Assembly: GCF_040938485.1 (NCBI RefSeq)
Contig: NW_027270889.1
Span: 682,001 to 746,000, forward strand
From: Diadema antillarum
Lineage: Eukaryota
Reading direction: 5' to 3'
DNA length: 64,000 bases
Shown piece after piece: positions 43,297 to 57,493 of this stretch. The notes beneath the pieces are model-generated. The model searched no databases. It was not told the DNA's origin and was given only the letters and a program-made list of their open reading frames with translations. Position 1 is the first letter of the stretch. Each line of letters starts with the position of its first letter. The translations under genes and the position numbers were made by a program.

Positions 43297-44023
43297 CCTA
43301 CCTGCTCCCTCCTTCTCCCCTCAGACGAGTACAAAAAACGTCCAACGTTTCCTGTTTCTTCCGAAGGTTCATGTCGCATGTTCCCGTCACCGGCTTATTC
43401 GATACTGTTTAATCGCATTGATTGTGCCACTTCCCTGAGACCGAGCGAGTATGGATCTATACAGGTGTCCGAGGAGGTGTTAAAAGTCCCCACTCTCTCT
43501 TCTCCGTCCATTAATAGCTGTCCAGACTACCGCACTTTCTTATCAAAGCATTTTTACCTCTGTTCGCACCTATCCACACTAACGTCATTCATTAGTCAAA
43601 TTTCGATCTGTGTTTTCTTACCGCTGTCTATTTTTCGCACTTACTCTGTTTGTCGAGCCATTTCCGTTCATCGCTTGTGCGTATTTGTCGTGCCGTGTTT
43701 GCTTCGATGCGTGCGCTTTGTTATGAATAATAAATAAATTACGGGTTTTACGCCATTGGCAATTTGACTGAACGGGAGATAGATTTGGCAGAGCACCTCT
43801 AAGTGCGATTGATTGAGATAAAACAAATTTAAGGTATTATAAATAATTCGTGACAACTTTCTGCGCCACCTTTTTCGCCAACTTTTAAAGCACAACCCTT
43901 ATTTTATCATTCTTCTGAAGTAACAAAGGTGATCTAAAAACAACAGAGAAAAACCTTTTCGTGCCAGTGTAAACATGCTCATTCCTTGTCAGTGTAAACA
44001 TGCTCATTTCTTTTCATTCATAG

Positions 44024-44133
44024 TAGTGGGGTGGCTTAGTGAAATTATCGTGACACGGTGGACAAAAGCATGATTTTTTCACCAAAGGTACCTCATGATA
44101 TGCCTTTTCAAAAAAAAGGGTGCTCCAAAGAAA
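44024..44133. repeat. Academ left terminal inverted repeat
   Basis: Imperfect inverted match to 55215..55334; first 16 bp identical. Confidence 0.88.
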
Positions 44134-44454
44134 CTGATGCTGGGAAGGAGGTCAAAGGTCAAAGGTCAACGACCTTTGTTTATGAAATTGGTTTTTTGGC
44201 TATTTCTCGAGTCAGGAATGTCAAATCTGGATAAAACCTGGCTGGAAGAATAATGAGAACAATTAAAATATTTCAACCTAATTTGGAGTGAATTTGCCAA
44301 AGGTCAAAGGTCAAAGGTCAATGAACTTTTTTTCTAAAAAATCAGGTTTCTTACCTATTTCTCCAGGTAGGAAAGATGAAATTTTCACAAGCTTGATATG
44401 AAAGAAGGTACAAAGCAAATATAGTAGGGGAGGAATATGATCGTTGATTTTTAC

Positions 44455-44633
44455 GTTGCCATGGCAACCCAATACAAAGGTTTTAAGTTGAAGTTGATTA
44501 CAGGAAGCTATACAGTATAACTTCCAGTTCTGAAGAGATTTCATTTGAATAGGTGCAACTGATCGACTGGACGATTGGAGGTATTTGTAATACTTTTTTC
44601 TGAATGTTAAGTGGTATATGTTGCCATGGCAAC
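44455..44633. promoter_or_regulatory. Two perfect RFX X-box palindromes inside the Academ element
   Basis: GTTGCCATGGCAAC at 44455-44468 and 44620-44633; function untested. Confidence 0.45.
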
Positions 44634-44675
44634 TACACATTTAGATTTTGGTTAAATTCATAGGAGACTTTAGAA

Positions 44676-45049
44676 CAGAGCTACCAAGTCTCACGCATTC
44701 TGAGTGAGACTCGAGCATTTAGGGGCCATCTCACAATCTCACGCATGGCACCCATCTTTCTCACACATCGAGCGAAGTCTGCAACTCGGGCCTATAATAA
44801 TGAGCATAGCCCAAAGGATTAATGTGATAGTTGCAATTGAAGGTATATTTCCCTTTTGTCATTCAAAATAGGTAAAAAACAGTCACTTAAGTATGAACCT
44901 GATTGCATCATTAAGAGCTAAAAATTGAAAAAGCTCCCTACCGCGATACCGAGGGAGGGGTAAAAAAAACCTCCCACCCTCACTCATGCGCCGAGATGCT
45001 GAGCCATGAAAATCTCACTAATAAAATTCTTTTGCACTTGGCATCCCTG
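44676..45049. mobile_element. hAT-like MITE nested in the Academ element
   Basis: Ends CAGAGCTACCAAGT and ACTTGGCATCCCTG (11/14 inverted match); flanking direct repeat TTAGAA(C). Confidence 0.65.
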
Positions 45050-45554
45050 TTAGAACTTCCATGACTTTGAAGAGACTCCCACCAGGGTTGGTATGATTGA
45101 TCAATATAATGTACCGGTATAGCAGAATTTTTATAAGCAATGAATCTCGAAAAAAAAATGTATTTCTGCTTTATTTCCGTGGTTTCACTTCTGGTATGTC
45201 ATTGAATTTACTATTTCTGTGCGACTTAGGCTTCATAATCTAATCATGAAAATAAACAATGCTCCTGTTGTATACTCATGCTTTGCTTACTGTAACCAAT
45301 ACTAGTATGATATATCGTCTTATCATGTGTATACTTTGACAAGATCTGGAACAGAACTAGAGCTGTAAACGTGTACAATATACATGTCACATATACTTTG
45401 TAGCTTACCACCAGGTGAATTTCATTCAAAAATAAATAATTAATAAAACAAGTTGGCTCCAGCTCTGGTTAATTATTGTGTTTTCATCATTGTGGGCTTC
45501 TCTGGCACCCGGTTAGCATACAATTTTGTAATTATACCTGACATGTGGGCAAGC

Positions 45555-48500
45555 TTATTTCTGACAGCAGCAAGAGCAGAGTTCTGTGCATGGTAATCCA
45601 GCTTTCGAGCACTTGCAGCGAGAAACACATCCAGCTTCTGCCCTGCAGCCACACTTGATGAGCTCCTTACAGGCTTTAGCTGCTTCAGGAATGGTCAACC
45701 AAACTGGTGCCCAGTGACCATCCTCCATTGTCCATCCCCATCCCTCTGGAGAAGGAACTGCAGATTGTGCCTGGCGACATGTTGTCCAAATGCCACTTTG
45801 GTATAATACCCTCTTGATATGCTGGAGCAGTGCATCCTAATATAGTTTGGAAAAAAAACCACACCAGATATATTGTATAGTTAATCAACTGTTTCAACAA
45901 ATAATAACATGTTACCTTAACATAAAAAAGAACTGTTTGGTTGAGATGGTGACAAATTCCTATCATATCTGTTTCTTTTTAATACCAGTACTTAAATACT
46001 ATTTTCATAATAGCAAGTTTCAAAACAAGCCACCAGGCTTTGAAGGTTGTACAAACAAGAACTTGAGTATCGCATTGCCCAACAGAATGATTAACTCCAT
46101 TTGCATTATAGGAAATGATTATTTAAACTATGAACACTGATATTGGTATCATTATGTTATTTTCATTGATTTTTCAGGACATTAATCATGTTTTTTTCAA
46201 AAGTATTTGCAATTTAATTTCTTGTTCCGTGTATGTCCTATCCCTTGGGGTAAGGAAAGTGACTGTGAATGTGCAAATGAACGTACCTGAGTTGGGGGTA
46301 TGTTCTCCAGGTTTCTTTTCCTCTTGCAGAAGAGCTCTCGGCGCGCTTCATTCACAGAGACGAGATTGCTTGTCACATCATACATCAGGACTGTAAATCG
46401 CTCAAGACAACTGATATGTTCAGATGAAACATCTACTGCTTGGAATGGATGATCCACAAAATGAAGGAATGCTTGTGTCACTTCAGGATAAGATTTCCAG
46501 ACCCTCCATGCACTTTTCTTCCCTTTTCCAAGGAAGCAAGACGTGGTATCACAACCTGTGTAAGCATGAAACAGGGGCAGCGCTCGTGACTTGTCATCTC
46601 CAAGATGTTTGCAAATGTTATTGATGTTGTAGTGACAGAAGTTCTTCCCCACACCGAACGCCACCCAAATGTCAATGTCAGGATGTTCAATGAACAATGA
46701 TGGAAACTGTCCGATGAGAATAACAAGAACGTCTGTGTCCACTGTTCGGATTACAATCTTCCTTGACCCTCTCTCCACTGCATGCTGAAGATGAACTGTG
46801 ATTCTTGTATCTGCTTCTTCATGTGTGCAGTCTGCCATGGGTTCACAATCACCCCTTGCAATCACCGAAGTACCTGAAAAGTCATAAAAGAGAAAAAGAG
46901 AAAGACTTTGAATTTTCTTCTCTGCCTATGGACCCATAGATACATGTGTTCTAAAGTTACATGGATAATACTTCAAGATTAGTGAGATCATATGAAGCTC
47001 TTCCCAAACTAATTCCCACTCATCAAGCTTTTGTTATGCATTGGTTGTAATTACACAAAATGTATCTTAATCTTATAATTATTAGAGATAGTATTGTCTA
47101 AATCAGAAGTACATAAAGAATAACGTACCTGAGGTTACATACAGCTCCTTTTCTTTGGGACACTCTAGTTCAGCCACTCTCTGTGTCAGGAATGCGAACA
47201 GCTCTTCTTTGTTAGTACTGTCTTGGAGGAAGTCTTTCCAGTTGGCTGGCATTTTGGTCGTGGGTGCTACCTTTCTGCGCAATCCACTTCCACGCTTCTG
47301 TCGAGTAGATTCCTTGATGCTGCAGGCTAAATATCGGTCCCACACCAAGTCTAGTCGTTTGATTCCTGTCAATTCACGGTCCAGAATGGGCTTGAACACT
47401 GTTCTTGCATAGTCTTCAAATGTAGACACGGATGATGTTGGCAACCCATGAACTAGAGCTGCACCATCAAAAATCTTACAGTCTATGTGTGCAGGCGGCT
47501 CTCCTTGTCCATTTGTGTCCAGACATGTTAGTAATTTGGACTTGCTTGATGTCAAGCGCAGTTTCCCGCCAATTGATAGAGATGGTGGGTGTACCTGATT
47601 CTCGTGGCTGAAGAATACTGTTGGGTCACCATCACGCAGCTGGTTTGCGATGTACATGCGACCAAAGAGGCTCACATCATTCTGAAGAGATGTAATTTTT
47701 GCAGTTTTGCGATTCCTTTGTGTCTTCACTGATGTCTTGAAGAGCGGAAGAGAATTCTTTTTGATTGGTGCATGGATGGATTTGGTTTTTTCAATGAACA
47801 CTTCCCGATTGTACGCTTGATACTGACTGGAACCAAGTTCTTCGATATGCTGTACTGTCTCTACCACTGATTTATCAGCACATACCCGAGAGTGCAAGAC
47901 CAACAATTCAGAATGGTCCTCAAGGAAAGGGTTGCCATATTCACTGATTGTCTCAATCAGTTTTGCTGTTTGACTACTGAAAGATTGTTGATCTGATTGA
48001 GTCTCTTCATGATGTTTGCAGTTTTCCTCTGGATCTTCTTCAGGTAAGTATTCACGTTCAAACTCTGTCAACAGTCTGGCTTGCTCGGGACCTGCAAGCA
48101 TCCATCGTTGGAAAGCATCAGGATTTTCGGTTAAGCCCACGGCTCCACCTTTACCTTTGACTTTTGCATTTTCCTGTTCATGGACTTGATCAATTGGAAG
48201 TGCAGAAAACCTCTTCTGTGTTTTGCTTACAACCCAGTTCTTCTGGAGCCCCTCTGATACAGCGTCTGGTAAGGACTGCATGTCTCGCAGATGGACAGAA
48301 ACCCAACGGCAGTAATTGTAGTGGTCCAGTGCAAAAAACAAGAACATCAGGCTTTGCAGTGACTCCACAAAGAGGAGGAAGTCCCTCTCTCGATGAGCTC
48401 TGATGAATATCAGGATCAAAATCTGAGTTCGCAAAACCAAGTCCCAGTACTGGAAGGTAGGGCTTTTACTAGACATAGAATGTCTCCAATCCTCAAATGT

Positions 48501-50713
48501 TCGGTTCCCACTTGTTGCTGCAACCTGTTCAAATGCCTGATGTTGTAACTTCGAAAGAGCTAGGGCAGTTACCTGGTGAGCATGTCGGGTCCTTGTAACA
48601 TGAGCAGCTTTAATGAAGGAGTTAGCTGTACCTGATGATGCAACACCTGAGTCGGTAAGAGCTTCCGTCCATCCGCTTTTGTCAAGGAAATCACCAAATG
48701 CTGTCCACAAGGCTTTCTCCAAATGAAATCCACCAAACATGATCACAAACTTATCCTCACCATGGGTTGAAGGCCAGGTCCATTGTATGTGCTTGCAGTT
48801 AGCGAATATTGGACAGTCACACGCCAACACAGGGATTTGGCCTGGATTAAGGAAGTTAGTGACAGTTGCAAGGACATTCATAGCATGCTTTATCATGGCA
48901 GGCGAGTCTGCCTTCTCTTGGAAGAGAGGGAGAAGTGCGATGACAGCAGGAAGATCAAGAGGAGGTGATTGCTTAGATGCATGATATGCAGCCCATGAGA
49001 TCACTTCTCCTTTCTTAAGTGTTTGTCTGTCGAGTAGTTCAGAGGCATGCTGAATCCATTTTCCCTCTTCTTCTTGTGCGTCTTGAAGCTTTCCATCTAC
49101 AGCCGTCATAGTAACCTTGGGAACACTAGTAGATGATGCTTTGAGATGGACTGATTCGACTATGCTATACGAATCAAGCAGTTGAGGTCTCTCATTTGGA
49201 TTTGCAGGAAGAAACCACTGTGATACCCGCCTCCGTCCAGGATGGTATTGTGTAGGAAATTGGATGACACTTATGCCACTTCCATGAAACGATCCTCTAG
49301 CTGTAGTTGACGATGGGTTATGATCAATGTTGTCTAGTGCCCCAACTGTAAAAATGCCTTTCCTCAGAATGGATGGACACACAATGTTTTCAGCTGTGAA
49401 CTGCTTGCACATTGCAACTGATAATTTCTTCTCTAACTGTAGAACTCTCTCATATGAGATGCTTAAACCAAGCCTGGCCAGTTGATTTATCAGCTGCTTG
49501 TTCCTTGTCGTGGTATGGATGTTCAGGCCAATGTAGATTGGAAGTGGTGGTTCTCTATCCTGAGACTGGCGTTTATGCGGGGTCGGATTTCTGCTCTTCT
49601 TCTTTGAATTATGGAGGAACATCTGGGCCATTGTGCAACATGCCTGTGAGTCATCACCATCCTCATTGTGTTTTAAGTCTGGTCCGTAAAGGATCATTGA
49701 TGACAGGAGTGTAAGACTTGGAAGCATCTTCTGACAATTCGGGGGGAAGCTGCCGGAAAATTCAAAATGTGTTTTCCTGAACATTTCTTCTCTGCAGATT
49801 TTCGCAACTTTGGCGAACAGGAAAGCTTCAGTTTGGTAGTCTTTGTCCTTTAGAGCATCCTTCAGCATTTGTTGCATACCTTCAGGGAATATGAGAACAA
49901 CATTCTTGCCATCTGATTGTTCTTGTACGCCTGTTTCGAAGAAGTGATCCACAAGCTTCATTTTCAACCGGCCCTTGTTCACAGATACATGATGTCCAAG
50001 ACTTTCGAGACGCTGTTCATACTTCTCGTGGAGATCGGATAGCTTGAAGATGTACTGCCCATCTTCTATTGCAAGCTCAACATAAGAAACCAGCTCAACA
50101 AATGCTCGAGCATGTGCTCGTTCGCCCTCTGTCGTTTCTGTACTGGAAGAACCAACTTTGCGCTGATGGCCCCTATAATTGTTCCTAAATTTAGTCAATC
50201 TATGTGATACTTCGCTTCTAGAGCAATGATGTCACTTCCTGCTATTTTGTGCATGAGTTCTTCATCTTGCATATCACTTGCCATTTTCCTGAGAGACTGA
50301 TCAGCTTCAAATGTTTGAAAACTATGCAGTTTGTCATTGCCAATTTGTTCACAGAAGAGACACAAACTCCTGTATTCAAATCCCGACTTCTGGCGCTTTG
50401 ACCGTCTCATGTCACATTGTGCATCTCCTTCTTCTTCATCTTTTCTTTCCCCTTTCAATTTGCGTTTGAGTTTGTCATTATTAAATTGTTGATGACAACA
50501 ACGGTGCCACAAGGCATTGTTTCTCACAAATGCCTCAACTGTTCCTTCAGATCCAAAGTCCACATCAATTGGCAAGGCGTTTATTTTCCTGAACTCCTCA
50601 ACATTTTTCAAAAATGAAGCATAAACCTTTTCAGCATTGAGTCCCCCTTTTTTTGGACAGTGAAGTTTTTCTTGTGTTTGTTCCTGGCAGATTACACAAA
50701 TGCTCCAATCCAT
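45555..50713 (-). pseudogene. Academ transposase gene (DDE transposase + XPG-like nuclease + Cys8 finger), 3 coding exons, one frameshift
   Basis: Exons 50713-47129 (frameshift near 50198), 46873-46287 and 45836-45555, with GT-AG introns in phase. Motifs: ALDNIDHNP, ACDCP, FGGFH, IDQVHEQEN; HEEADTR, VDTDV, TGCDTTSCFLGKGK; ELIKCGC..GC.SRCKC.KAGLPCTELCSC*. The last exon is not in the ORF track. Confidence 0.88.
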
Positions 50714-52280
50714 GGTGACCTAAAGAGAATTAAGAAAATTAAAATGAATATAATTAAAATCAATACTACAGATACCGGTACCAGTAACTTACTTCATTCT
50801 TCTCTCCCCACCTCCACCCCTTCACTTTGGCTTATAGATATACAGTTGTAGCTGACTTGAATAAATGTCATTATGTAACATCATCTTTGATTGACAAGAC
50901 ACTAGAACTTAGCAATCATTTCATTTTGCTGCTGGACGCATGAGGTTAGTTGAACTATTGTTGTTTTTAATGTAGTACACTTTTTCCTCCTATTAATCAC
51001 ATGGATTTGGGATGGAATGCATTTTGACATGAAGCATCATAAATATTTGAATAAACCGCCTCTGTGGTCGGGAATATTCCACTCTAAGCCATTTTTTTAC
51101 GCCTTTGTAAACTTCCCCCTAGACTTTGTTCACCAGCCAATTACAATTACAAATGTGAACCAACCAAACATTACTTTTGAATAGCATGTCTATAGCTATC
51201 AGACCCAAAATATTCAAACCACTTGGAGTCTTTATCAGTGAAATTACAAATGTAAAGATATTATAAGAAGAATTCAAAATGTCTCAATTTTACTTCAACT
51301 CTGGAAACAATAAACATTTACCCTTTTTAAACCTTTGAATAACCTCCATAAGAAGTAAACACATAGAGAGCAGAAGGGAAAACAATACATAAGTGCTTAC
51401 AGAAACTGAGCAGTCCCTGTGTTAAACCTATGGGACTCGGACAATCTCAAAGGAAACAGGTTACATTTGTTTGGAAATATGTGGGGCAATACCCAAAACA
51501 AAGTTTTCAATGCAATAAATGCAGCTCTCCTGCTGGTAGACTAGTGGTTTTGGTAGAAAAAAAAATATTAGCTGCAACACACCTGGTTCTGTCATTGTCC
51601 AACATTTATCTGAACCGGTGTGATGCCACGCTTTGCTATTTCTCTTCAAGAGGTAGATACTGCTTTGATAATCCTTTATCAGTAATATCAAATAATTTAG
51701 TAAAAAGGTGCTTAAGAATACTGGACTGTTCCAACAATCCCCCCTCAGGTCTGCAACACAGACTAACCACCTGCTACCATAGGAAAACCAGTATAAAGTA
51801 GTGCATTATTGTAAACATGCACATGTAGTGATGTGGGTCTGAATTCCAAGACTAGCAACCTAATACTAGTACATTGCATTGCCTACGTACATAGTTGTAT
51901 TGCAATTGCCCATGTTGTACGGTACAGTGTGCAGACCTCCTCACAAAGTCTGTAAACAGACTGCAGATCAATGTGACTAGACTGAGACATGATGAAATGT
52001 ATGTATGTCATCTGAAGTATCTAAAAAGTGCAGTTTATTTTATAGTAGGAATAAATCCCTGAGGAAAAAAAACACATTATCTAATAAATTATTTAGTTGA
52101 ACATTTGAAATTTGCATGAGAAATAACAGTTAGTGGATTTGTAATCATTTAAAACCTCAATCCGAGGATTTCTTGATCTAATTTTTATTTGAAAAAAATA
52201 TCTGTACAGTCAATTGTCTGTGATACACGAAATTAAATATTATAGGCTTAAATTGAAGGAGGGAATTTTCTCATTCTTTA

Positions 52281-54130
52281 TAGTAGGCCTAAAGGTGCTC
52301 CACACTGGAGATTCGGTTTATCTACTGTCATGACTGTTTGAGAACAGAACTTGAAGGCTTAATGTTAGAGGTCTAACGCTAGACTAACTCAGCAACTGAC
52401 ATTGATGGTCAAATGTAATTGTTAGAGGGTCTAGATATCTACCCCTGTAGGGTCTAACAGTAACATATTATGTTCCATATAAAACGGTCTAGATAGTCTA
52501 CAACTGATTGAAAGTTTAGAATCTAGGCCTAGGGTCCTACTTCCGCTTTAAAGAATTTGACCCAACTAGATTGTTCTAGGCCTACTTCTAACCTTAGTAA
52601 GGTCTACATCTGGCAACGTGCAGTATATGCTTAGGCCTAGACCTAACTAACGTTAGGTTAGAACCTTTTCTAGACACCTAGTGTTACCGGTACTTAGAAC
52701 TGCTAGGCCAGGGGCCTACTGTTTATATACAGGCCATAGAGGTCTAGGTCTAGAAGGTCTTTAAAAAGTAAATGCAATATCCTCAGGCTTAGCACATCTA
52801 AAATGCTAAATCATGAAATCACTGGCTCACATGATGTAAATGAAAAATCTTCTAAAATTAAAAATGATTAGGGCCTACGCCTAATCAACGATCGAAGAGG
52901 TCTAGAATTTAGAAACGTTCTTAGACTCTCTATTACATTGTTAATGTTAGGTGCTAGATCTAGAACTAGACCTCTAGGATCCCTAGATCTATTTAGATCT
53001 AGGTCCTATGTCTAGAATTTCGTCTAACTGTTAGATCTATAACAAAGAACGGCTCCTAAGTGTTAGAACCTAGATGTAACATTAGATTCTAGATCTAACG
53101 TTAGATCTAGATTCTAAAGCTAACATTAGATCTAATAAATAACCGTCGTTTATACGCCTGATTCTTCAGTCTAGCGGTCTAGACCTTGATCTAACAGTAA
53201 GAATTAATGGTTAACGCTAGAAACCTGTCTAGCAGTCAGGTGTCACCTCCAGATTCTCTGTTTAGGGTGCCTAGATCTAGTTCTAACGACACACGTTAGG
53301 ACCTAGGCCTAACGAGCTTAATTTTTTATCCACTGCCCCCAAACAAATGGAATCTGTCATGCATTCCAATCTAACGCTAAAGGCCTAACGTTACAGCCTA
53401 GTCCTAGCCTAATTTAACCAACACTACAGTAGGCCTAGGCCTAGGCATATAACGTTAGGCCTACACAGGTTGGTCTAGACTGCATAGACAGCCCAGTCGC
53501 TGAATCAAAAGGTTCTGCACGGTGTCTTGTCGGCTTAAACCTAGAACCCCTAAGTGTGTTAAAGATCACGATCTTTGATAAAGTTACAGGTTGCTTGCTC
53601 CTAATTTGTTACGTTACAATTACAATAGTTTACATAGAGGGTCTGAAACAAACCAATTAACAGTTAGGCCTAACGACCTACGTTAGGCCTAACAAACGGC
53701 TACATGGATGAGTCTAACGTTACACTAATACACCACAGTCTAACTCTTATAGTCTAACGTTAAGCTTAATTTGTAATTTTCTGACCCAAAACAAAGAATG
53801 TCATTAACGTTGTTAGGGTCCCTACATTGCATACTAGAGTCTAGAGACAGTATACCTATAAGTCAAGTGGTTAGTGTCTAGATCTAACCTTTCCTGTCAC
53901 ACACATCAGTCTCACTCTCACCAGTCTTAGACTCAATAAATGAAACTATCAATATCATTCTCACCAGTTAGGGGCCTAATTGCCAAAGCTTAGACTAGAT
54001 AGGTTCTAGTTCTATATCTTTTTTCAAATTTTGGTGTAACTTAAACAACGGGTTGGACTCACTCTATTAACTAAGTTAGTCTCCAACCGTTTGTCTTATT
54101 AAACAATTACTCAGTAGGCCTAGGCCTACC
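52281..54130. repeat. CTAG/TCTAGA/TAGGCCTA-rich low-complexity tract inside the Academ element
   Basis: Dense short palindromes (TAGGCCTA, TCTAGA, AGATCT, CTAACGTTAG), including a 36-bp near-perfect palindrome at 53082-53117. Confidence 0.75.
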
Positions 54131-54592
54131 CGAATTACCTACGATGACACCCAGAGGCAGTATACAGACAGTAAGTTGAAAACTTGAGTTGTATGATGGG
54201 GGTTGTGTTTCTGGACACTTAAACTTATGTTTGCGCGTGAAAACTAAATTGCACCCTTTCCCTCAAAGACTTGATATAGACTCCTCATTTTAAATGCTAG
54301 ACAACGTACTCTGAAAACGGCGTGAGAATTAACCTGCTAAATCGTTACATTTCCCCTTCAAAGTACAAGTACAACTCTATAACAGTTATATATGTACGCG
54401 TCCGGTCCCACAACGCTTGGTCGTATTGTTTGGACTATTGTAAGAGGGCCGTTCAAAGGATTCAATCCTGAGCCTGGGGCTGAGGAGATCCATGTGAAGT
54501 ACCTGGTACTGTATCCACGGAATTATCAGTCAATTAATTTGTGGCCCTCTACAAGTTTTCAATTTACTGGGCGTCATCGTAGGTAATTCAGG
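54129..54592. mobile_element. MITE-like insertion flanked by TA, nested in the Academ element
   Basis: CC(C/T)GAATTACCTACGATGAC(A/G)CCCAG...TAA(G/A)TTGAAAACTTG inverted at both ends, with a 17-bp insertion in the left arm. Confidence 0.55.
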
Positions 54593-55214
54593 TAATAATT
54601 CAGTTATTGTTATTGACTACCCTTAACGTTAGAATTGACATTGTCATTCTATATTACTTTCATATTTAGCTTGACCTTGAGTAGAAAACCCTCTAGGCCT
54701 GACGACAAAGTTAAATCTCATCTTTTGAATAACATTGGAGGTCTATTCCAGTAAATGCTATAAGAGTAAAAAGTGACTTACCTTTGTAATGAGGAAACAT
54801 ACATGTAGATCCGATCCCCAAAAGTGGCCAAAGCCAACAAAGGCCAAGATGAATGGAGTTTTTTAGTCACTGCATTGGCTGGACACAGCTGTTTCTCTCA
54901 TGCTCAAATTGCTGCAGCTAGCTGCGATGCAGCTACATACACATAATATGTACGTGTAGGCCTTCCTGCACTGTGCGGTGTGCTCACGCACAGTACACTG
55001 TACATTACATGTAGGCCTAGCCTGTAGCCAGCTAGCTGTCTTGCCTAGCTAGCTAGCTGGCCTTTCAGAACTTTAGACCAATCAGATGCGAGCATTGAGA
55101 AATTAGGTGAATGCACTGTTGTACTAGTCTATGAATTCAGACATCATTGCTTCATATGTAAAATTTTAAAAAATGTGCAAATTAAGGGTATTTTCTCATT
55201 ATTACTGTTGGCAG

Positions 55215-55334
55215 ATTTCTTGGAGCACCCCCTAATTTTGATCCTTATATATATACAAATGTCTGAGGAAAAAATTACACTTTTGTCCGGCGTGTCACGA
55301 TTATCAGTATATTTGTCCCTAAGCCACCCCACTA
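55215..55334. repeat. Academ right terminal inverted repeat
   Basis: Ends CTAAGCCACCCCACTA and is followed by the TAG TSD. Confidence 0.88.
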
Positions 55335-57493
55335 TAGTGGGAATGCATGATTTTTATAACTTCCAATGACGTATTGTATAGTATATCTGAAGATCCAGTT
55401 TGAAGCAATTAGACAGCTGCTCTATGAGAACTTTAAATGGCAATTTATGCTACCAAATTTTGTGCAATAAATTTAGCATTATTGAAAGACATTGTACAGC
55501 TTCATGTAGAGTTTCTCTCTGACTATTTTTGTTTGTTAAAATCATTTCTACTGCAATAACAGCTTTGTTAAAAAGTACAATTATCTGCGCCCAAATCACA
55601 TTTCGCTCATCTTATTTTTCCATTTTACTGATATCTTTTATAGGCCCTATCTGTGGTTGTGAGGATATCTTTAAACGTCTTTCAATTCCCACAGCGAGCA
55701 AAGTTTCACTAAACTAATAGTGATTATCAGATCAAACAGATTCAAATATCAATCAAATGCTTACCCTTTAAGCCGTTTTTGTGTTTTCTTGATGGTGGAA
55801 TAACATAATCATTTTCAATCCGTTAGATTGCAGTATTTCTCATTTAGATTTTATTCTATTAAATCCATTTCATTTTCCTTCCACAGAACATAGAACATAA
55901 TCACAATATTACAATCGATCTTGAGTACACATTGGTTGATTGCAAGATAAAAAATTGATGGTAATCAACGAATTAAAAGCATGATTGTATACATATAGAT
56001 TCAAAGCAAGCTTATTTCATTATCTCCATTCTGAGAAAAATAAATAAGGGTCTTCTAAAAAGCTATTCTTACATAAAATGTGGACGACTCATGCGTGGAC
56101 ACCCAAAACTAAGACTTTATAATTCTAAAATAAAAAGTAAAAGTGCACCATATTGTGCCACTGGAGAGTTTCAAAATGGCATGCAACCAAATACGTGAGC
56201 CTGCGATAACGCCGTTTATTGCCACTAGGACACAATAACATTGCATAAAAATATTTATGCATCTCCGTGACATATCAACTGCAGTATCATGAGTAATTTT
56301 TCAAGCATAGTCTTTTGAGTGGATACCTCTTATTTTTTCGCAGAGTGGATCAAAGTGTATGTTTCTTTTTGTAGTGAACATGTACACACGAACATATTGT
56401 TATCCCTGTCTGACTATGTATGTTATCAACGACTCGCATGTCAAATTTATCATATTGTTTCTTGTACATTCCGTTGAAAAAAAGTGAAAAATAAAGTTTG
56501 AAAGTTTCAAAGAAAGATATTAGGTATTTCAAAAAATTACTCCTTTAAGAAAAAAAAACAATGAATGGTGATAGTTGTATGACTAATTTATACTTTCATG
56601 CAATATGTTTTATTAACGGCATATATATTTTTATTGCTTTTTCAATTCAGTTCAGTTTAATTCTGCATTCCGTTTTCATTGCATATGAGGAAAAATTGAC
56701 GTTATTATGTCATAAATCATACAAATTGTTTCAGCGCATTAATACACATTGTGGAGTACGATTGTATAAAGAAAACGTATAGGGACCATCTTCATAAGCA
56801 GAGCTTGACTAGGAAGATGGCCCCGGTGTCTGTGTATTTAACCCAAAACTTAACTTCCATTTTATTTCCCAGCATGTTTTGAAACGTAAAATCAACGCCA
56901 CACTCTCAAGTTATAATATTATTGTAGTAATTTATGCTTGATATGAAATACCAATTACCCATTCTATACTTAACATACAATGGTTCTACAGCAGATAAAG
57001 AAGTCACTGGAGGTAGCATAATGTTCGGAAGCTGCATGCAGTCAGGCAATCTGGAATGGACAATATAGCTGTGTATTGAAAAATCACAGCAATCAATTAT
57101 ACTCCCTAGAACAACTTTCACCTTCAGGTGAGATAAAATGGTGTTTCCTCTATACAGATAAAGTAAAAGGGATGTTGGGTAACCGATGAAAACCGACCAT
57201 TCAAGTTGGATAATTACACGCCCAATTGCATGACGCATGCAACTAGTCTATTTGGGTGTAATTATAATGTATCGAACCTTGTTTAGGTTTCCCGGCATTC
57301 ATTTGGTATCCCGTTGTGAGACCTTTTTTCGCGCATTATTGTCGATTATCAGTCAATTTGAATACCACTCATAATAGGGCACATAAAGCTTAGTATTCCA
57401 GCCCTCTTAGCTTCAGCGACTTTTCCGATAATCTAACTGAAATCTTGGGACAAACTAAGACTGTACCTGATGCACAGTTACCTGTAGAGACAA

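What the first reader, a model, noticed from the sequence alone, without database searches (positions are those of the whole stretch)
44024..55334. Complete 11.3-kb AcademX transposon with both TIRs, a TAG TSD and a spliced transposase-XPG-Cys8 gene
Seen: both ends, a 3-bp TSD, three coding exons, plausible catalytic residues (DNID, CDCP, GGFH, HEQ), an XPG/FEN1 domain and a Cys8 finger, plus likely 5' non-coding exons (donors at 54781 and 50792, acceptor 6 nt before the ATG). The TSD (TAG) is the same as the first three TIR bases. Known: Academ is a poorly characterised superfamily, AcademX makes 3-4-bp TSDs, and I know of no biochemical account of why a flap-type nuclease is fused to the transposase. 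Inference: a probably undescribed family, and one repair would give a testable protein.
Basis: partly seen in the sequence, partly recalled or inferred. Interest (0 to 1): 0.72.

Follow-up and report, generated by a model that had tools for sequence, protein, structure and literature searches.

The report
Young Academ-type transposon, frameshifted copy
This is one copy, disabled by a private 4-base deletion, of a very young and probably still mobile 11.3-kb DNA transposon; its single spliced gene fuses a cut-and-paste transposase to a flap-endonuclease-like nuclease, and seven sister copies in the same genome have that gene intact.

Summary
Window 44024-55334 is a complete 11,311-bp DNA transposon. 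It has perfect 16-bp terminal inverted repeats and a 3-bp TAG target duplication.

- **Boundaries.** Another contig of the same assembly holds the empty site with a single TAG.
- **Copies.** Seven more full-length copies share the same ends and have different 3-bp duplications. They differ from each other by about 0.05%, and every substitution is a singleton. Two more copies also have empty-site alleles.
- **Gene.** The minus-strand gene has three coding exons, colinear with uninterrupted homologues of about 1,485 aa.
- **Domains.** The order is an N-terminal Cys/His region, an RNase-H-fold DDE core (best match P-element transposase, Z 10.7), a FEN/EXO1/XPG-fold nuclease (Z 16.3) and a Cys-rich tail.
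- **This copy.** It alone lacks 4 bp at 50195/50196 and is frameshifted. The other seven are open, so no repair is needed.

The features fit the AcademX lineage: a nuclease partner and a 3-bp duplication. I could not compare it with Repbase or Dfam. No RNA data were found, so the proposed 5' non-coding exons are untested.

Verdict: a new family of a known superfamily, and a good candidate for a first functional study. The scan has already noted other Academ-like elements in this genome.

The parts
44024..55334 (-). Complete transposon, 11,311 bp; its gene lies on the minus strand
   Evidence: TIRs, TSD and an empty-site allele in contig C2907. Seven other copies share the same boundaries.
44021..44023 (.). 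Left copy of the 3-bp target-site duplication (TAG)
   Evidence: the empty site has a single TAG
55335..55337 (.). Right copy of the 3-bp target-site duplication (TAG)
44024..44039 (+). Left terminal inverted repeat, 16 bp perfect; imperfect similarity to the right end runs on to about 44260
   Evidence: (pairs I6, I1, I12, I5)
55319..55334 (-). Right terminal inverted repeat, 16 bp perfect
47129..50713 (-). Coding exon 1, from the ATG at 50713. It holds the N-terminal Cys/His region, the DDE transposase core and the first half of the nuclease. In this copy the frame is broken after codon 172 by a 4-bp deletion.
   Evidence: ORFs; 1196 open codons in the 7 other copies; colinear with homologues
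50195..50196 (-). Site of the private 4-bp deletion; placement is ambiguous by up to 3 bp within a TTG/TTTG repeat. It removes the codon of the conserved Cys171 and shifts the frame.
   Evidence: Alignment of 8 copies. A public-run contig carries the longer form (table 4).
50198..50713 (-). N-terminal region with two conserved CxxC...HxxC units, a putative zinc-binding DNA-recognition domain
   Evidence: Conserved C6, C9, H72, C75, C117, C120, H168, C171. No Pfam or PDB family match.
47919..49601 (-). RNase-H-fold DDE catalytic core with an all-helical insertion. Candidate catalytic residues are D289/D292, D461 and E674, numbered in the 1023-aa piece of exon 1.
   Evidence: Conservation. Model of homologue P0013:375-1010 with pLDDT 89. 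VIA-align Z 10.7 to P-element transposase, with Hermes, RAG1 and integrases below it. Pfam DUF6589 at 28.3 bits.
46874..47128 (-). Intron 1 (GT...AG, phase 1); it splits the nuclease domain
46287..46873 (-). Coding exon 2: second half of the FEN/XPG-type nuclease, with the motifs HEEADTR, DTDV and GCDTT
45837..46286 (-). Intron 2 (GT...AG, phase 0)
45555..45836 (-). Coding exon 3: a conserved W-rich linker, then a Cys-rich tail (CxC-x5-C-x3-CxC-x6-C-x3-CxCCC) and the stop codon
   Evidence: no Pfam or PDB match
50720..50792 (-). Putative 73-nt 5' UTR intron (GTAAGT ... polypyrimidine tract-AG), ending 6 nt before the ATG. Untested.
   Evidence: sequence only
54780..54781 (-). Putative donor of a first non-coding exon (AAAG|GTAAGT), with a CCAAT motif about 95 nt upstream. 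Untested.
   Evidence: sequence only
44149..44323 (+). Two clusters of AAAGGTC heptamer repeats in the left subterminal region. Copy number varies between copies (7-bp indels).

Best explanation
This is a copy of a very young autonomous cut-and-paste DNA transposon of the Academ type, in the nuclease-bearing AcademX lineage.

The family's single spliced gene encodes a protein of about 1,485 aa. Its parts, in order, are:
- an N-terminal Cys/His region, presumably for recognising the element's ends;
- an RNase-H-fold DDE transposase core;
- a FEN1/EXO1/XPG-fold 5' nuclease;
- a Cys-rich tail.

Shown here: the element inserts with a 3-bp staggered target cut and was mobile very recently. Insertions are present on one haplotype only, and the copies are nearly identical. 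The window copy is dead because of a private 4-bp deletion in exon 1. Seven sister copies have the frame open.

Inferred mechanism: the DDE site exposes the 3'-OH ends of the element and joins them to target phosphates 3 bp apart. The fused structure-specific nuclease cuts the other (5') strand at each end. It could do this at a melted end before joining, or on the 5' flap of the strand-transfer intermediate. Either way the event becomes cut-and-paste. This would be a division of labour like Tn7 TnsB and TnsA.
For: - **Boundaries and TSD:**
- **Empty-site alleles:** the flank matches overlap by exactly 3 bp for three copies.
- **Copy set:** eight copies with distinct flanks. There are 22 substitution sites, all singletons, and mean pairwise divergence is 0.049%.
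- **Reading frames:** exon 1 is open (1196 codons) in 7 of 8 copies, and exons 2 and 3 are identical in all.
- **Gene model:** the pieces are colinear with uninterrupted homologues of 1,460-1,540 aa.
- **Transposase core:** the model has pLDDT 89. The best match is the P-element transposase strand-transfer complex, Z 10.7 over 342 residues. Hermes, ISCth4, RAG1 and retroviral integrases come next. D289/D292, D461 and E674 are invariant and sit on strand 1, just after strand 4 and on a late helix.
- **Nuclease:** the model has pLDDT 90. Z is 16.3 to EXO1, 14.5 to FEN1, 13.4 to XPG and 12.5 to GEN1. Conserved acidic residues occur in FEN-like order.
- **Literature:** AcademX makes 3-4-bp TSDs and carries a nuclease; AcademH makes 9-10-bp TSDs and carries a helicase (PMC10045372).
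- **Non-autonomous relatives:** a 3.7-kb family shares the termini and has a 3-bp TSD.
Against: - No curated Academ sequence was available, so superfamily membership is by features, not by direct homology.
- Pfam XPG_N/XPG_I do not detect the nuclease, and profile searches of PDB sequences find nothing.
- There is no RNA evidence for the splicing or for expression.
- The structures were predicted for a homologue about 52-59% identical (P0013), not for the window's own spliced product.
- The role of the nuclease is pure inference.
- In FEN1 and EXO1 the nuclease starts at the protein's free N-terminus. Here it is fused behind about 1,050 residues (model residue 12 aligns with chain residue 2), so substrate handling may differ.
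- One copy (C117) lacks a matching TSD.
Confidence: 0.85

Rival explanations
1. The element belongs to another DDE superfamily, P-like or an unnamed one, that independently acquired a FEN-type nuclease. It is not Academ.
For: The best structural match of the core is P-element transposase, Z 10.7, well above the next hits at about 7. No direct comparison with curated Academ transposases was possible. The only Pfam label is DUF6589.
Against: The TSD is 3 bp, not the 7-8 bp of P elements (general knowledge of that family). No THAP domain was detected in the N-terminal region. The combination of transposase, nuclease and a 3-4-bp TSD is what the literature gives for AcademX. Homologues are spread across molluscs, cnidarians and other animals, and bivalves are reported as rich in Academ (PMC10294476).
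Confidence: 0.07
2. The fused nuclease does not take part in the cleavage chemistry of transposition. Instead it works afterwards. It could trim 5' flaps during repair of the 3-nt gaps at the new site, or process the donor break.
For: FEN-family enzymes are repair and replication nucleases. The fold match is best to EXO1 and FEN1. Other eukaryotic DDE transposases manage second-strand cleavage without an extra nuclease, for example by hairpins or sequential hydrolysis (established knowledge).
Against: Host FEN1, EXO1, XPG and GEN1 genes are present in this genome (9 XPG_I hits), so carrying a private repair nuclease seems redundant. The nuclease acidic residues are invariant across 52 homologues. 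The sister lineage replaces the nuclease with a helicase and changes TSD length, which points to a role inside the transpososome.
Confidence: 0.3
3. The eight copies are segmental duplications or assembly redundancy, not transposition products.
For: The assembly holds both haplotypes in places. The C1203 fragment shares its flank with the C894 copy.
Against: All eight full-length copies have different flanks. Seven have perfect, different 3-bp TSDs. Similarity stops exactly at the TIR tips. Three copies have precise empty sites.
Confidence: 0.01

Closest known systems
AcademX lineage of the Academ superfamily (Kapitonov & Jurka 2010; Kojima 2020, as cited in PMC10045372)
   Same: It has TIRs and a 3-bp TSD, inside the 3-4 bp reported for AcademX. 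It encodes a DDE transposase with an XPG/FEN-type nuclease. The host is a transposon-rich invertebrate genome, and homologues are common in molluscs and cnidarians.
   Different: No reference sequence was available, so identity to any named family is unknown. The nearest public protein is 62% identical. At 11.3 kb the element is about twice the mean length of 5.6 kb reported for curated bivalve Academ elements (PMC10294476). The extra length is a 4.5-kb non-coding 5' region.
Drosophila P-element transposase (PDB 6p5a)
   Same: It is the best structural match of the catalytic core: Z 10.7, 342 aligned residues, rmsd 4.9. Both are RNase-H folds with a large insertion before the helix that carries the last acidic residue.
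   Different: Sequence identity is 8%. No THAP domain was detected here. The TSD is 3 bp rather than 8 bp. The insertion is all-helical in the model, and GTP binding was not assessed. P elements carry no fused nuclease.
Rad2/XPG family 5' nucleases (EXO1, FEN1, XPG, GEN1)
   Same: The fold matches over about 250-260 residues, with Z 12.5-16.3. Conserved acidic residues occur in the same order: D, D, E/E-x-D, D-x-D, D.
   Different: Sequence identity is 10-16%, and the Pfam XPG models do not detect the domain. It sits in the middle of a 1,485-aa protein rather than at a free N-terminus. A W-rich linker and a Cys-rich tail follow it.
Tn7 TnsA/TnsB
   Same: The similarity is a proposed functional analogy only. 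A DDE enzyme handles the 3' ends and a second, unrelated nuclease handles the 5' ends.
   Different: TnsA is a restriction-enzyme-fold protein, is separate from TnsB, and is bacterial. The analogy is inference and was not tested here.

Membership tests
Academ superfamily, AcademX lineage | Target-site duplication of 3-4 bp | tested here: met
   The TSD is 3 bp in 7 of 8 full-length copies and in a non-autonomous relative. Three empty-site alleles show a 3-bp overlap of the flanks. The definition is from PMC10045372.
Academ superfamily, AcademX lineage | Encodes an XPG/FEN-type nuclease together with the transposase, where AcademH has a helicase instead | tested here: met
   A predicted structure of the homologous region matches EXO1, FEN1, XPG and GEN1 at Z 12.5-16.3. 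No helicase domain was found. The match is by structure only; Pfam XPG models miss it.
Academ superfamily, AcademX lineage | RNase-H-like DDE transposase with terminal inverted repeats | tested here: met
   The fold matches DDE transposases and integrases. D, D and E are invariant. The TIRs are 16 bp perfect.
Academ superfamily, AcademX lineage | Significant sequence similarity to curated Academ transposases (Repbase/Dfam entries or the Yuan-Wessler Academ profile) | not testable with these tools
   No Repbase or Dfam library was on hand, and the defining papers are not held. The only indirect evidence is Pfam DUF6589 at 28.3 bits against a cut-off of 27.
P-element superfamily | N-terminal THAP DNA-binding domain and a 7-8-bp TSD | tested here: not met
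   There is no THAP hit in the N-terminal region of 54 homologues. The conserved pattern is CxxC...HxxC. The TSD is 3 bp.
Rad2/XPG nuclease family (Pfam XPG_N, XPG_I) | Sequence match to the XPG_N/XPG_I profiles | tested here: not met
   There is no Pfam hit at E up to 5. An XPG_I search of the whole genome finds 9 host loci and none of the transposon copies. hhalign against a host XPG_I exon gives nothing.
Rad2/XPG nuclease family (Pfam XPG_N, XPG_I) | FEN-type fold with the conserved set of metal-binding acidic residues | tested here: inconclusive
   The fold is met. Invariant D38, D77/D81, E169/E170/D172, D196/D198 and D259 of the model sequence occur in the expected order and spacing. No residue-level superposition could be inspected.

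The most novel reading that the evidence does not exclude
This family is a currently active AcademX element. Its fused FEN-type nuclease would be the dedicated 5'-strand (non-transferred strand) cleavage enzyme of the transpososome. That would make it a eukaryotic, single-polypeptide counterpart of the Tn7 TnsB/TnsA division of labour. It would also explain why the nuclease and helicase lineages of Academ make different target duplications.
Probability: 0.3. Interest if true: 0.75.

Novelty: new member of a known kind. Interest (0 to 1): 0.45.

Why it matters
To my knowledge no member of the Academ superfamily has been studied biochemically, and the library search here found no such study. This genome offers a natural test system for it:
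- seven near-identical copies with open reading frames;
- insertions that are still heterozygous;
- exact ends, with empty sites on hand;
- a matching non-autonomous family.

The family could therefore be used, without any reconstruction, to ask what a flap-type nuclease does inside a DDE transpososome.

The predicted structures add two concrete leads. The catalytic core is closest to P-element transposase, and the nuclease is closest to EXO1 and FEN1. As an annotation, the element itself is ordinary: one more family in an invertebrate genome already full of such elements.

Tried and rejected
- **Pfam on each exon piece and on full-length homologues.** Only a weak DUF6589 hit came back; there was no XPG, THAP or CXC domain.
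- **Profile searches of PDB sequences** with the N-terminal, core and nuclease alignments and with exon 3. Nothing significant.
- **hhalign of the nuclease profile against a host XPG_I exon.** Nothing.
- **RNA evidence.** The only two public runs holding the sequence look like low-coverage DNA contigs. One contig crosses an exon-intron border and none shows a joint. Splicing, expression and the 5' exons therefore remain untested.
- **Defining papers.** Kojima 2020 and Yuan & Wessler 2011 are not held. The definitions used here are second-hand, from PMC10045372.
- **ESM Atlas.** It gave only 'hypothetical protein / DUF6589' clusters from molluscs, arthropods and cnidarians.
- **Joined spliced protein.** Exons were handled by reference, one by one. 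The structures were predicted from parts of the uninterrupted homologue P0013.
- **Contig C1203.** It turned out to hold only the first ~290 bp of the element and was dropped from the copy analysis.
- **Large protein-representatives search.** Not used, because no claim here rests on an absence of relatives.


Full report
**Observation**

The left end of the region reads ...cataG|TAGTGGGGTGGCTTAG..., and the right end reads ...CTAAGCCACCCCACTA|TAGtggg.... The 16 terminal bases are perfect inverted repeats. The repeat finder extends the similarity, with gaps, through four collinear arm pairs to about 230 bp from each tip (alignment). TAG flanks both ends.

**Other copies and boundaries**

The window belongs to a 1.75-Gb assembly of 2,963 contigs. 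Searches with the terminal 300 bp of each end found seven more full-length copies of 11.3-11.5 kb, on contigs C1464, C1300, C1277, C1154, C894, C298 and C117. They also found many hits at lower identity.

In every copy the similarity stops at the same terminal base. The flanks are all different, and six of the seven other copies have a perfect 3-bp duplication: TGT, ATA, ACA, AAG, TTA and CAT. The TAG duplication of the window copy therefore resembles the first three TIR bases only by chance.

The C117 copy has unmatched flanks and a 179-bp insertion near its right end. It may have been rearranged.

**Empty sites**

The 600 bp to the left and the 600 bp to the right of the window copy both match contig C2907 at 100%. 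The two matches overlap by exactly 3 bp. The sequence there reads ...ttcattcaTAGtgggaatgc..., with a single TAG.

The same 3-bp overlap of flank matches was found for two other copies:
- the C1464 copy, on contig C969;
- the C1154 copy, on contig C1462.

The insertions are thus present on one haplotype and absent from the other. This proves the boundaries and the 3-bp duplication, and it shows that the insertions are very recent.

**Age and state of the copies**

An alignment of the eight copies has 22 substitution sites. All are singletons, which gives a star-like pattern. Mean pairwise divergence is 5.5 substitutions per 11.3 kb (0.049%), and at least one pair has no substitutions between them.

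A translated search of the genome finds exactly these eight copies at about 100% identity. The next relatives are only 35-53% identical and belong to several other families of the same kind.

Elements that share the termini at 83-96% identity are non-autonomous. A 3.7-kb example on C15 keeps about 650 bp of the left end, a fragment of exon 1, about 1.2 kb of the 5' region and 240 bp of the right end. It has a GTA duplication.

**Gene model**

On the minus strand an ORF starts at the ATG at 50713 and stops after 172 codons. A 1,031-codon ORF follows in another frame, overlapping it by 4 nt.

All seven other copies have 4 extra bases at this point (window 50195/50196). They read through 1,196 codons without a stop. 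Exons 2 and 3 are identical in all eight copies. A contig in a public run also carries the longer form.

The frameshift is therefore a private 4-bp deletion of the window copy. It removes the codon of an invariant cysteine (C171 in homologue numbering).

The exon borders are as follows:

| Exon | Window coordinates (minus strand) | Border |
|---|---|---|
| 1 | 50713-47129 | ends before GTACGT |
| 2 | 46873-46287 | starts after TTTTCAG, ends before GTACGT |
| 3 | 45836-45555 | starts after ATATTAG, runs through the stop codon |

The four translated pieces abut on uninterrupted homologues. On P0013 (1,485 aa) they cover residues 1-169, 172-1194, 1196-1390 and 1391-1485. The gaps correspond to the deletion site and to one split codon. 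This supports the splicing model strongly, but no RNA evidence was found. The two public runs that hold the sequence behave like sparse DNA contigs and show no joints.

Each piece was searched by reference, and structures were predicted from parts of P0013.

**Protein family**

The word-based search returned 418 relatives. The best is 62% identical, and most are 1,200-1,550 aa. They include unnamed predictions from Haliotis, Nematostella, Oculina, Actinostola and Myxine. None is annotated beyond 'hypothetical'.

The only Pfam label is DUF6589, at 28.3 bits against a cut-off of 27, on the core. The ESM Atlas gives the same picture.

**Transposase core**

In the numbering of the 1,023-aa piece they are:
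- D289-N-x-D292-H-N;
- D461-x-P;
- G489-G-x-H492-x-E494;
- H673-E674-Q675.

An AlphaFold model of P0013:375-1010 has mean pLDDT 89. It places the first motif on a beta strand and the second just after the fourth strand. The HEQ motif sits on a helix that follows a roughly 180-residue all-helical insertion.

An exhaustive structural comparison gives these matches:

| Match | Z | Detail |
|---|---|---|
| P-element transposase strand-transfer complex (6p5a) | 10.7 | 342 residues, rmsd 4.9 |
| Hermes | 6.9 | |
| ISCth4 | 6.9 | |
| RAG1 | 6.4 | |
| retroviral integrases | about 5.5 | |

Foldseek alone gave only weak Transib and Hermes hits. The core is an RNase-H-fold DDE enzyme.

**Nuclease**

A model of P0013:1045-1485 has mean pLDDT 90. 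Its matches are:

| Match | Z | Detail |
|---|---|---|
| EXO1 | 16.3 | 261 residues, rmsd 3.5 |
| FEN1 | 14.5 | |
| XRN2 | 13.8 | |
| XPG | 13.4 | |
| Rad2 | 12.9 | |
| GEN1 | 12.5 | |

Invariant acidic residues fall in the order expected for this family. The corresponding motifs FDGAA, VWDRY, HEEADTR, DTDV and GCDTT are all present in the window copy.

Sequence methods do not see the relationship. Pfam gives no hit. An XPG_I search of the whole genome finds nine host loci but none of the transposon copies.

The domain straddles intron 1. Unlike cellular FEN-family enzymes, it does not begin at a free N-terminus.

**Other regions**

The N-terminal 170 residues carry two conserved CxxC...HxxC units and match no family. 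The C-terminal tail has 11 cysteines in a CxC-rich pattern, of which 10 are conserved. It also matches no family. Both regions are probably zinc-binding, but that is inference.

**Classification**

PMC10045372, citing Kojima 2020, states that AcademX elements carry a nuclease and make 3- or 4-bp duplications. AcademH elements carry a helicase and make 9- or 10-bp duplications. The element meets the AcademX features that could be tested here.

A direct comparison with curated Academ sequences was not possible. The structural closeness of the core to P-element transposase does not make it a P element: it has no THAP domain and a 3-bp rather than 8-bp duplication.

Bivalve genomes are reported to be rich in Academ elements, with 100 curated consensus sequences of mean length 5.6 kb (PMC10294476). 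This scan has 16 notes on Academ-like elements in this same genome. The kind is known; the family may be new.

**Mechanism**

Shown: a 3-bp staggered integration and recent mobility.

Inferred: the DDE site generates and transfers the 3' ends, and the fused structure-specific nuclease cuts the 5' strands. It could do so at a distorted end, or on the 5' flap left in the strand-transfer intermediate, which would give cut-and-paste transposition.

The main rival is a post-transposition repair role for the nuclease. Mutant assays with strand-specific mapping would separate the two.

**5' region**

Consensus donor sites exist at 54781 and 50792. These are sequence matches only.

**Verdict**

The element is a new family of a known superfamily. 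Its interest lies less in this broken copy than in its seven open-frame, still polymorphic sisters.

Noticed in passing
window 44149-44173 and 44298-44323: There are two clusters of the heptamer AAAGGTC in the left subterminal region only. Copies of the family differ by 7-bp indels at 44297, so the repeat number is unstable. The clusters might be transposase-binding sites or plain microsatellite slippage.
   Followed up: partly
G000:C117:463554-475054 (L053, L054, L007, L028): This full-length copy has unmatched flanks (ata / ctt), so no TSD. It also has a 179-bp insertion near its right end, at window position 55084. It may be a product of recombination between two copies or of a flanking rearrangement.
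   Followed up: no
G000:C1203:819411-819701 (L008, L055, L056): Only the first ~290 bp of the element are present here. The flank is the same (gtacatgtacat) as at the C894 copy. This is probably the other haplotype or an assembly break near the contig end.
   Followed up: partly
G000:C15:3647601-3651269 (L057); G000:C555:1686474-1699558 (L058, L059): A 3.7-kb non-autonomous family shares the termini at 83-96% identity and keeps a fragment of exon 1 and about 1.2 kb of the 5' region. At least 30 left ends were listed. Two copies lie in direct orientation 5.7 kb apart on C555.
   Followed up: partly
own genome, e.g. G000:C128:1547276-1548979, C116:169324-171027 and about 20 more: A second transposase-nuclease family, 40% identical to this one, has at least 20 near-identical copies. 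Each has one in-frame TAG at the same place, which could be an intron or a shared defect. Several further families are 35-53% identical, and some have open frames of 1,400-1,670 aa.
   Followed up: no
window 47649-50579 (exon 1) against the rest of the element: Twelve of the 22 singleton substitutions among the eight copies lie in exon 1, which is 32% of the element's length. The modest excess may reflect higher GC or CpG content in the coding part. There is no sign of purifying selection after insertion.
   Followed up: no
window 54127-54154 / 54567-54594: A 28-nt inverted repeat, 93% complementary, encloses about 410 bp inside the long 5' non-coding region. A second inner pair sits at 54169/54552. 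It could be an old nested miniature element carried by all copies.
   Followed up: no
window 52360-54130: The 5' non-coding region is full of short TAGATCTAG / TAGGCCTAG-like palindromic motifs and small tandem repeats at 53063-53134. Their function is unknown.
   Followed up: no
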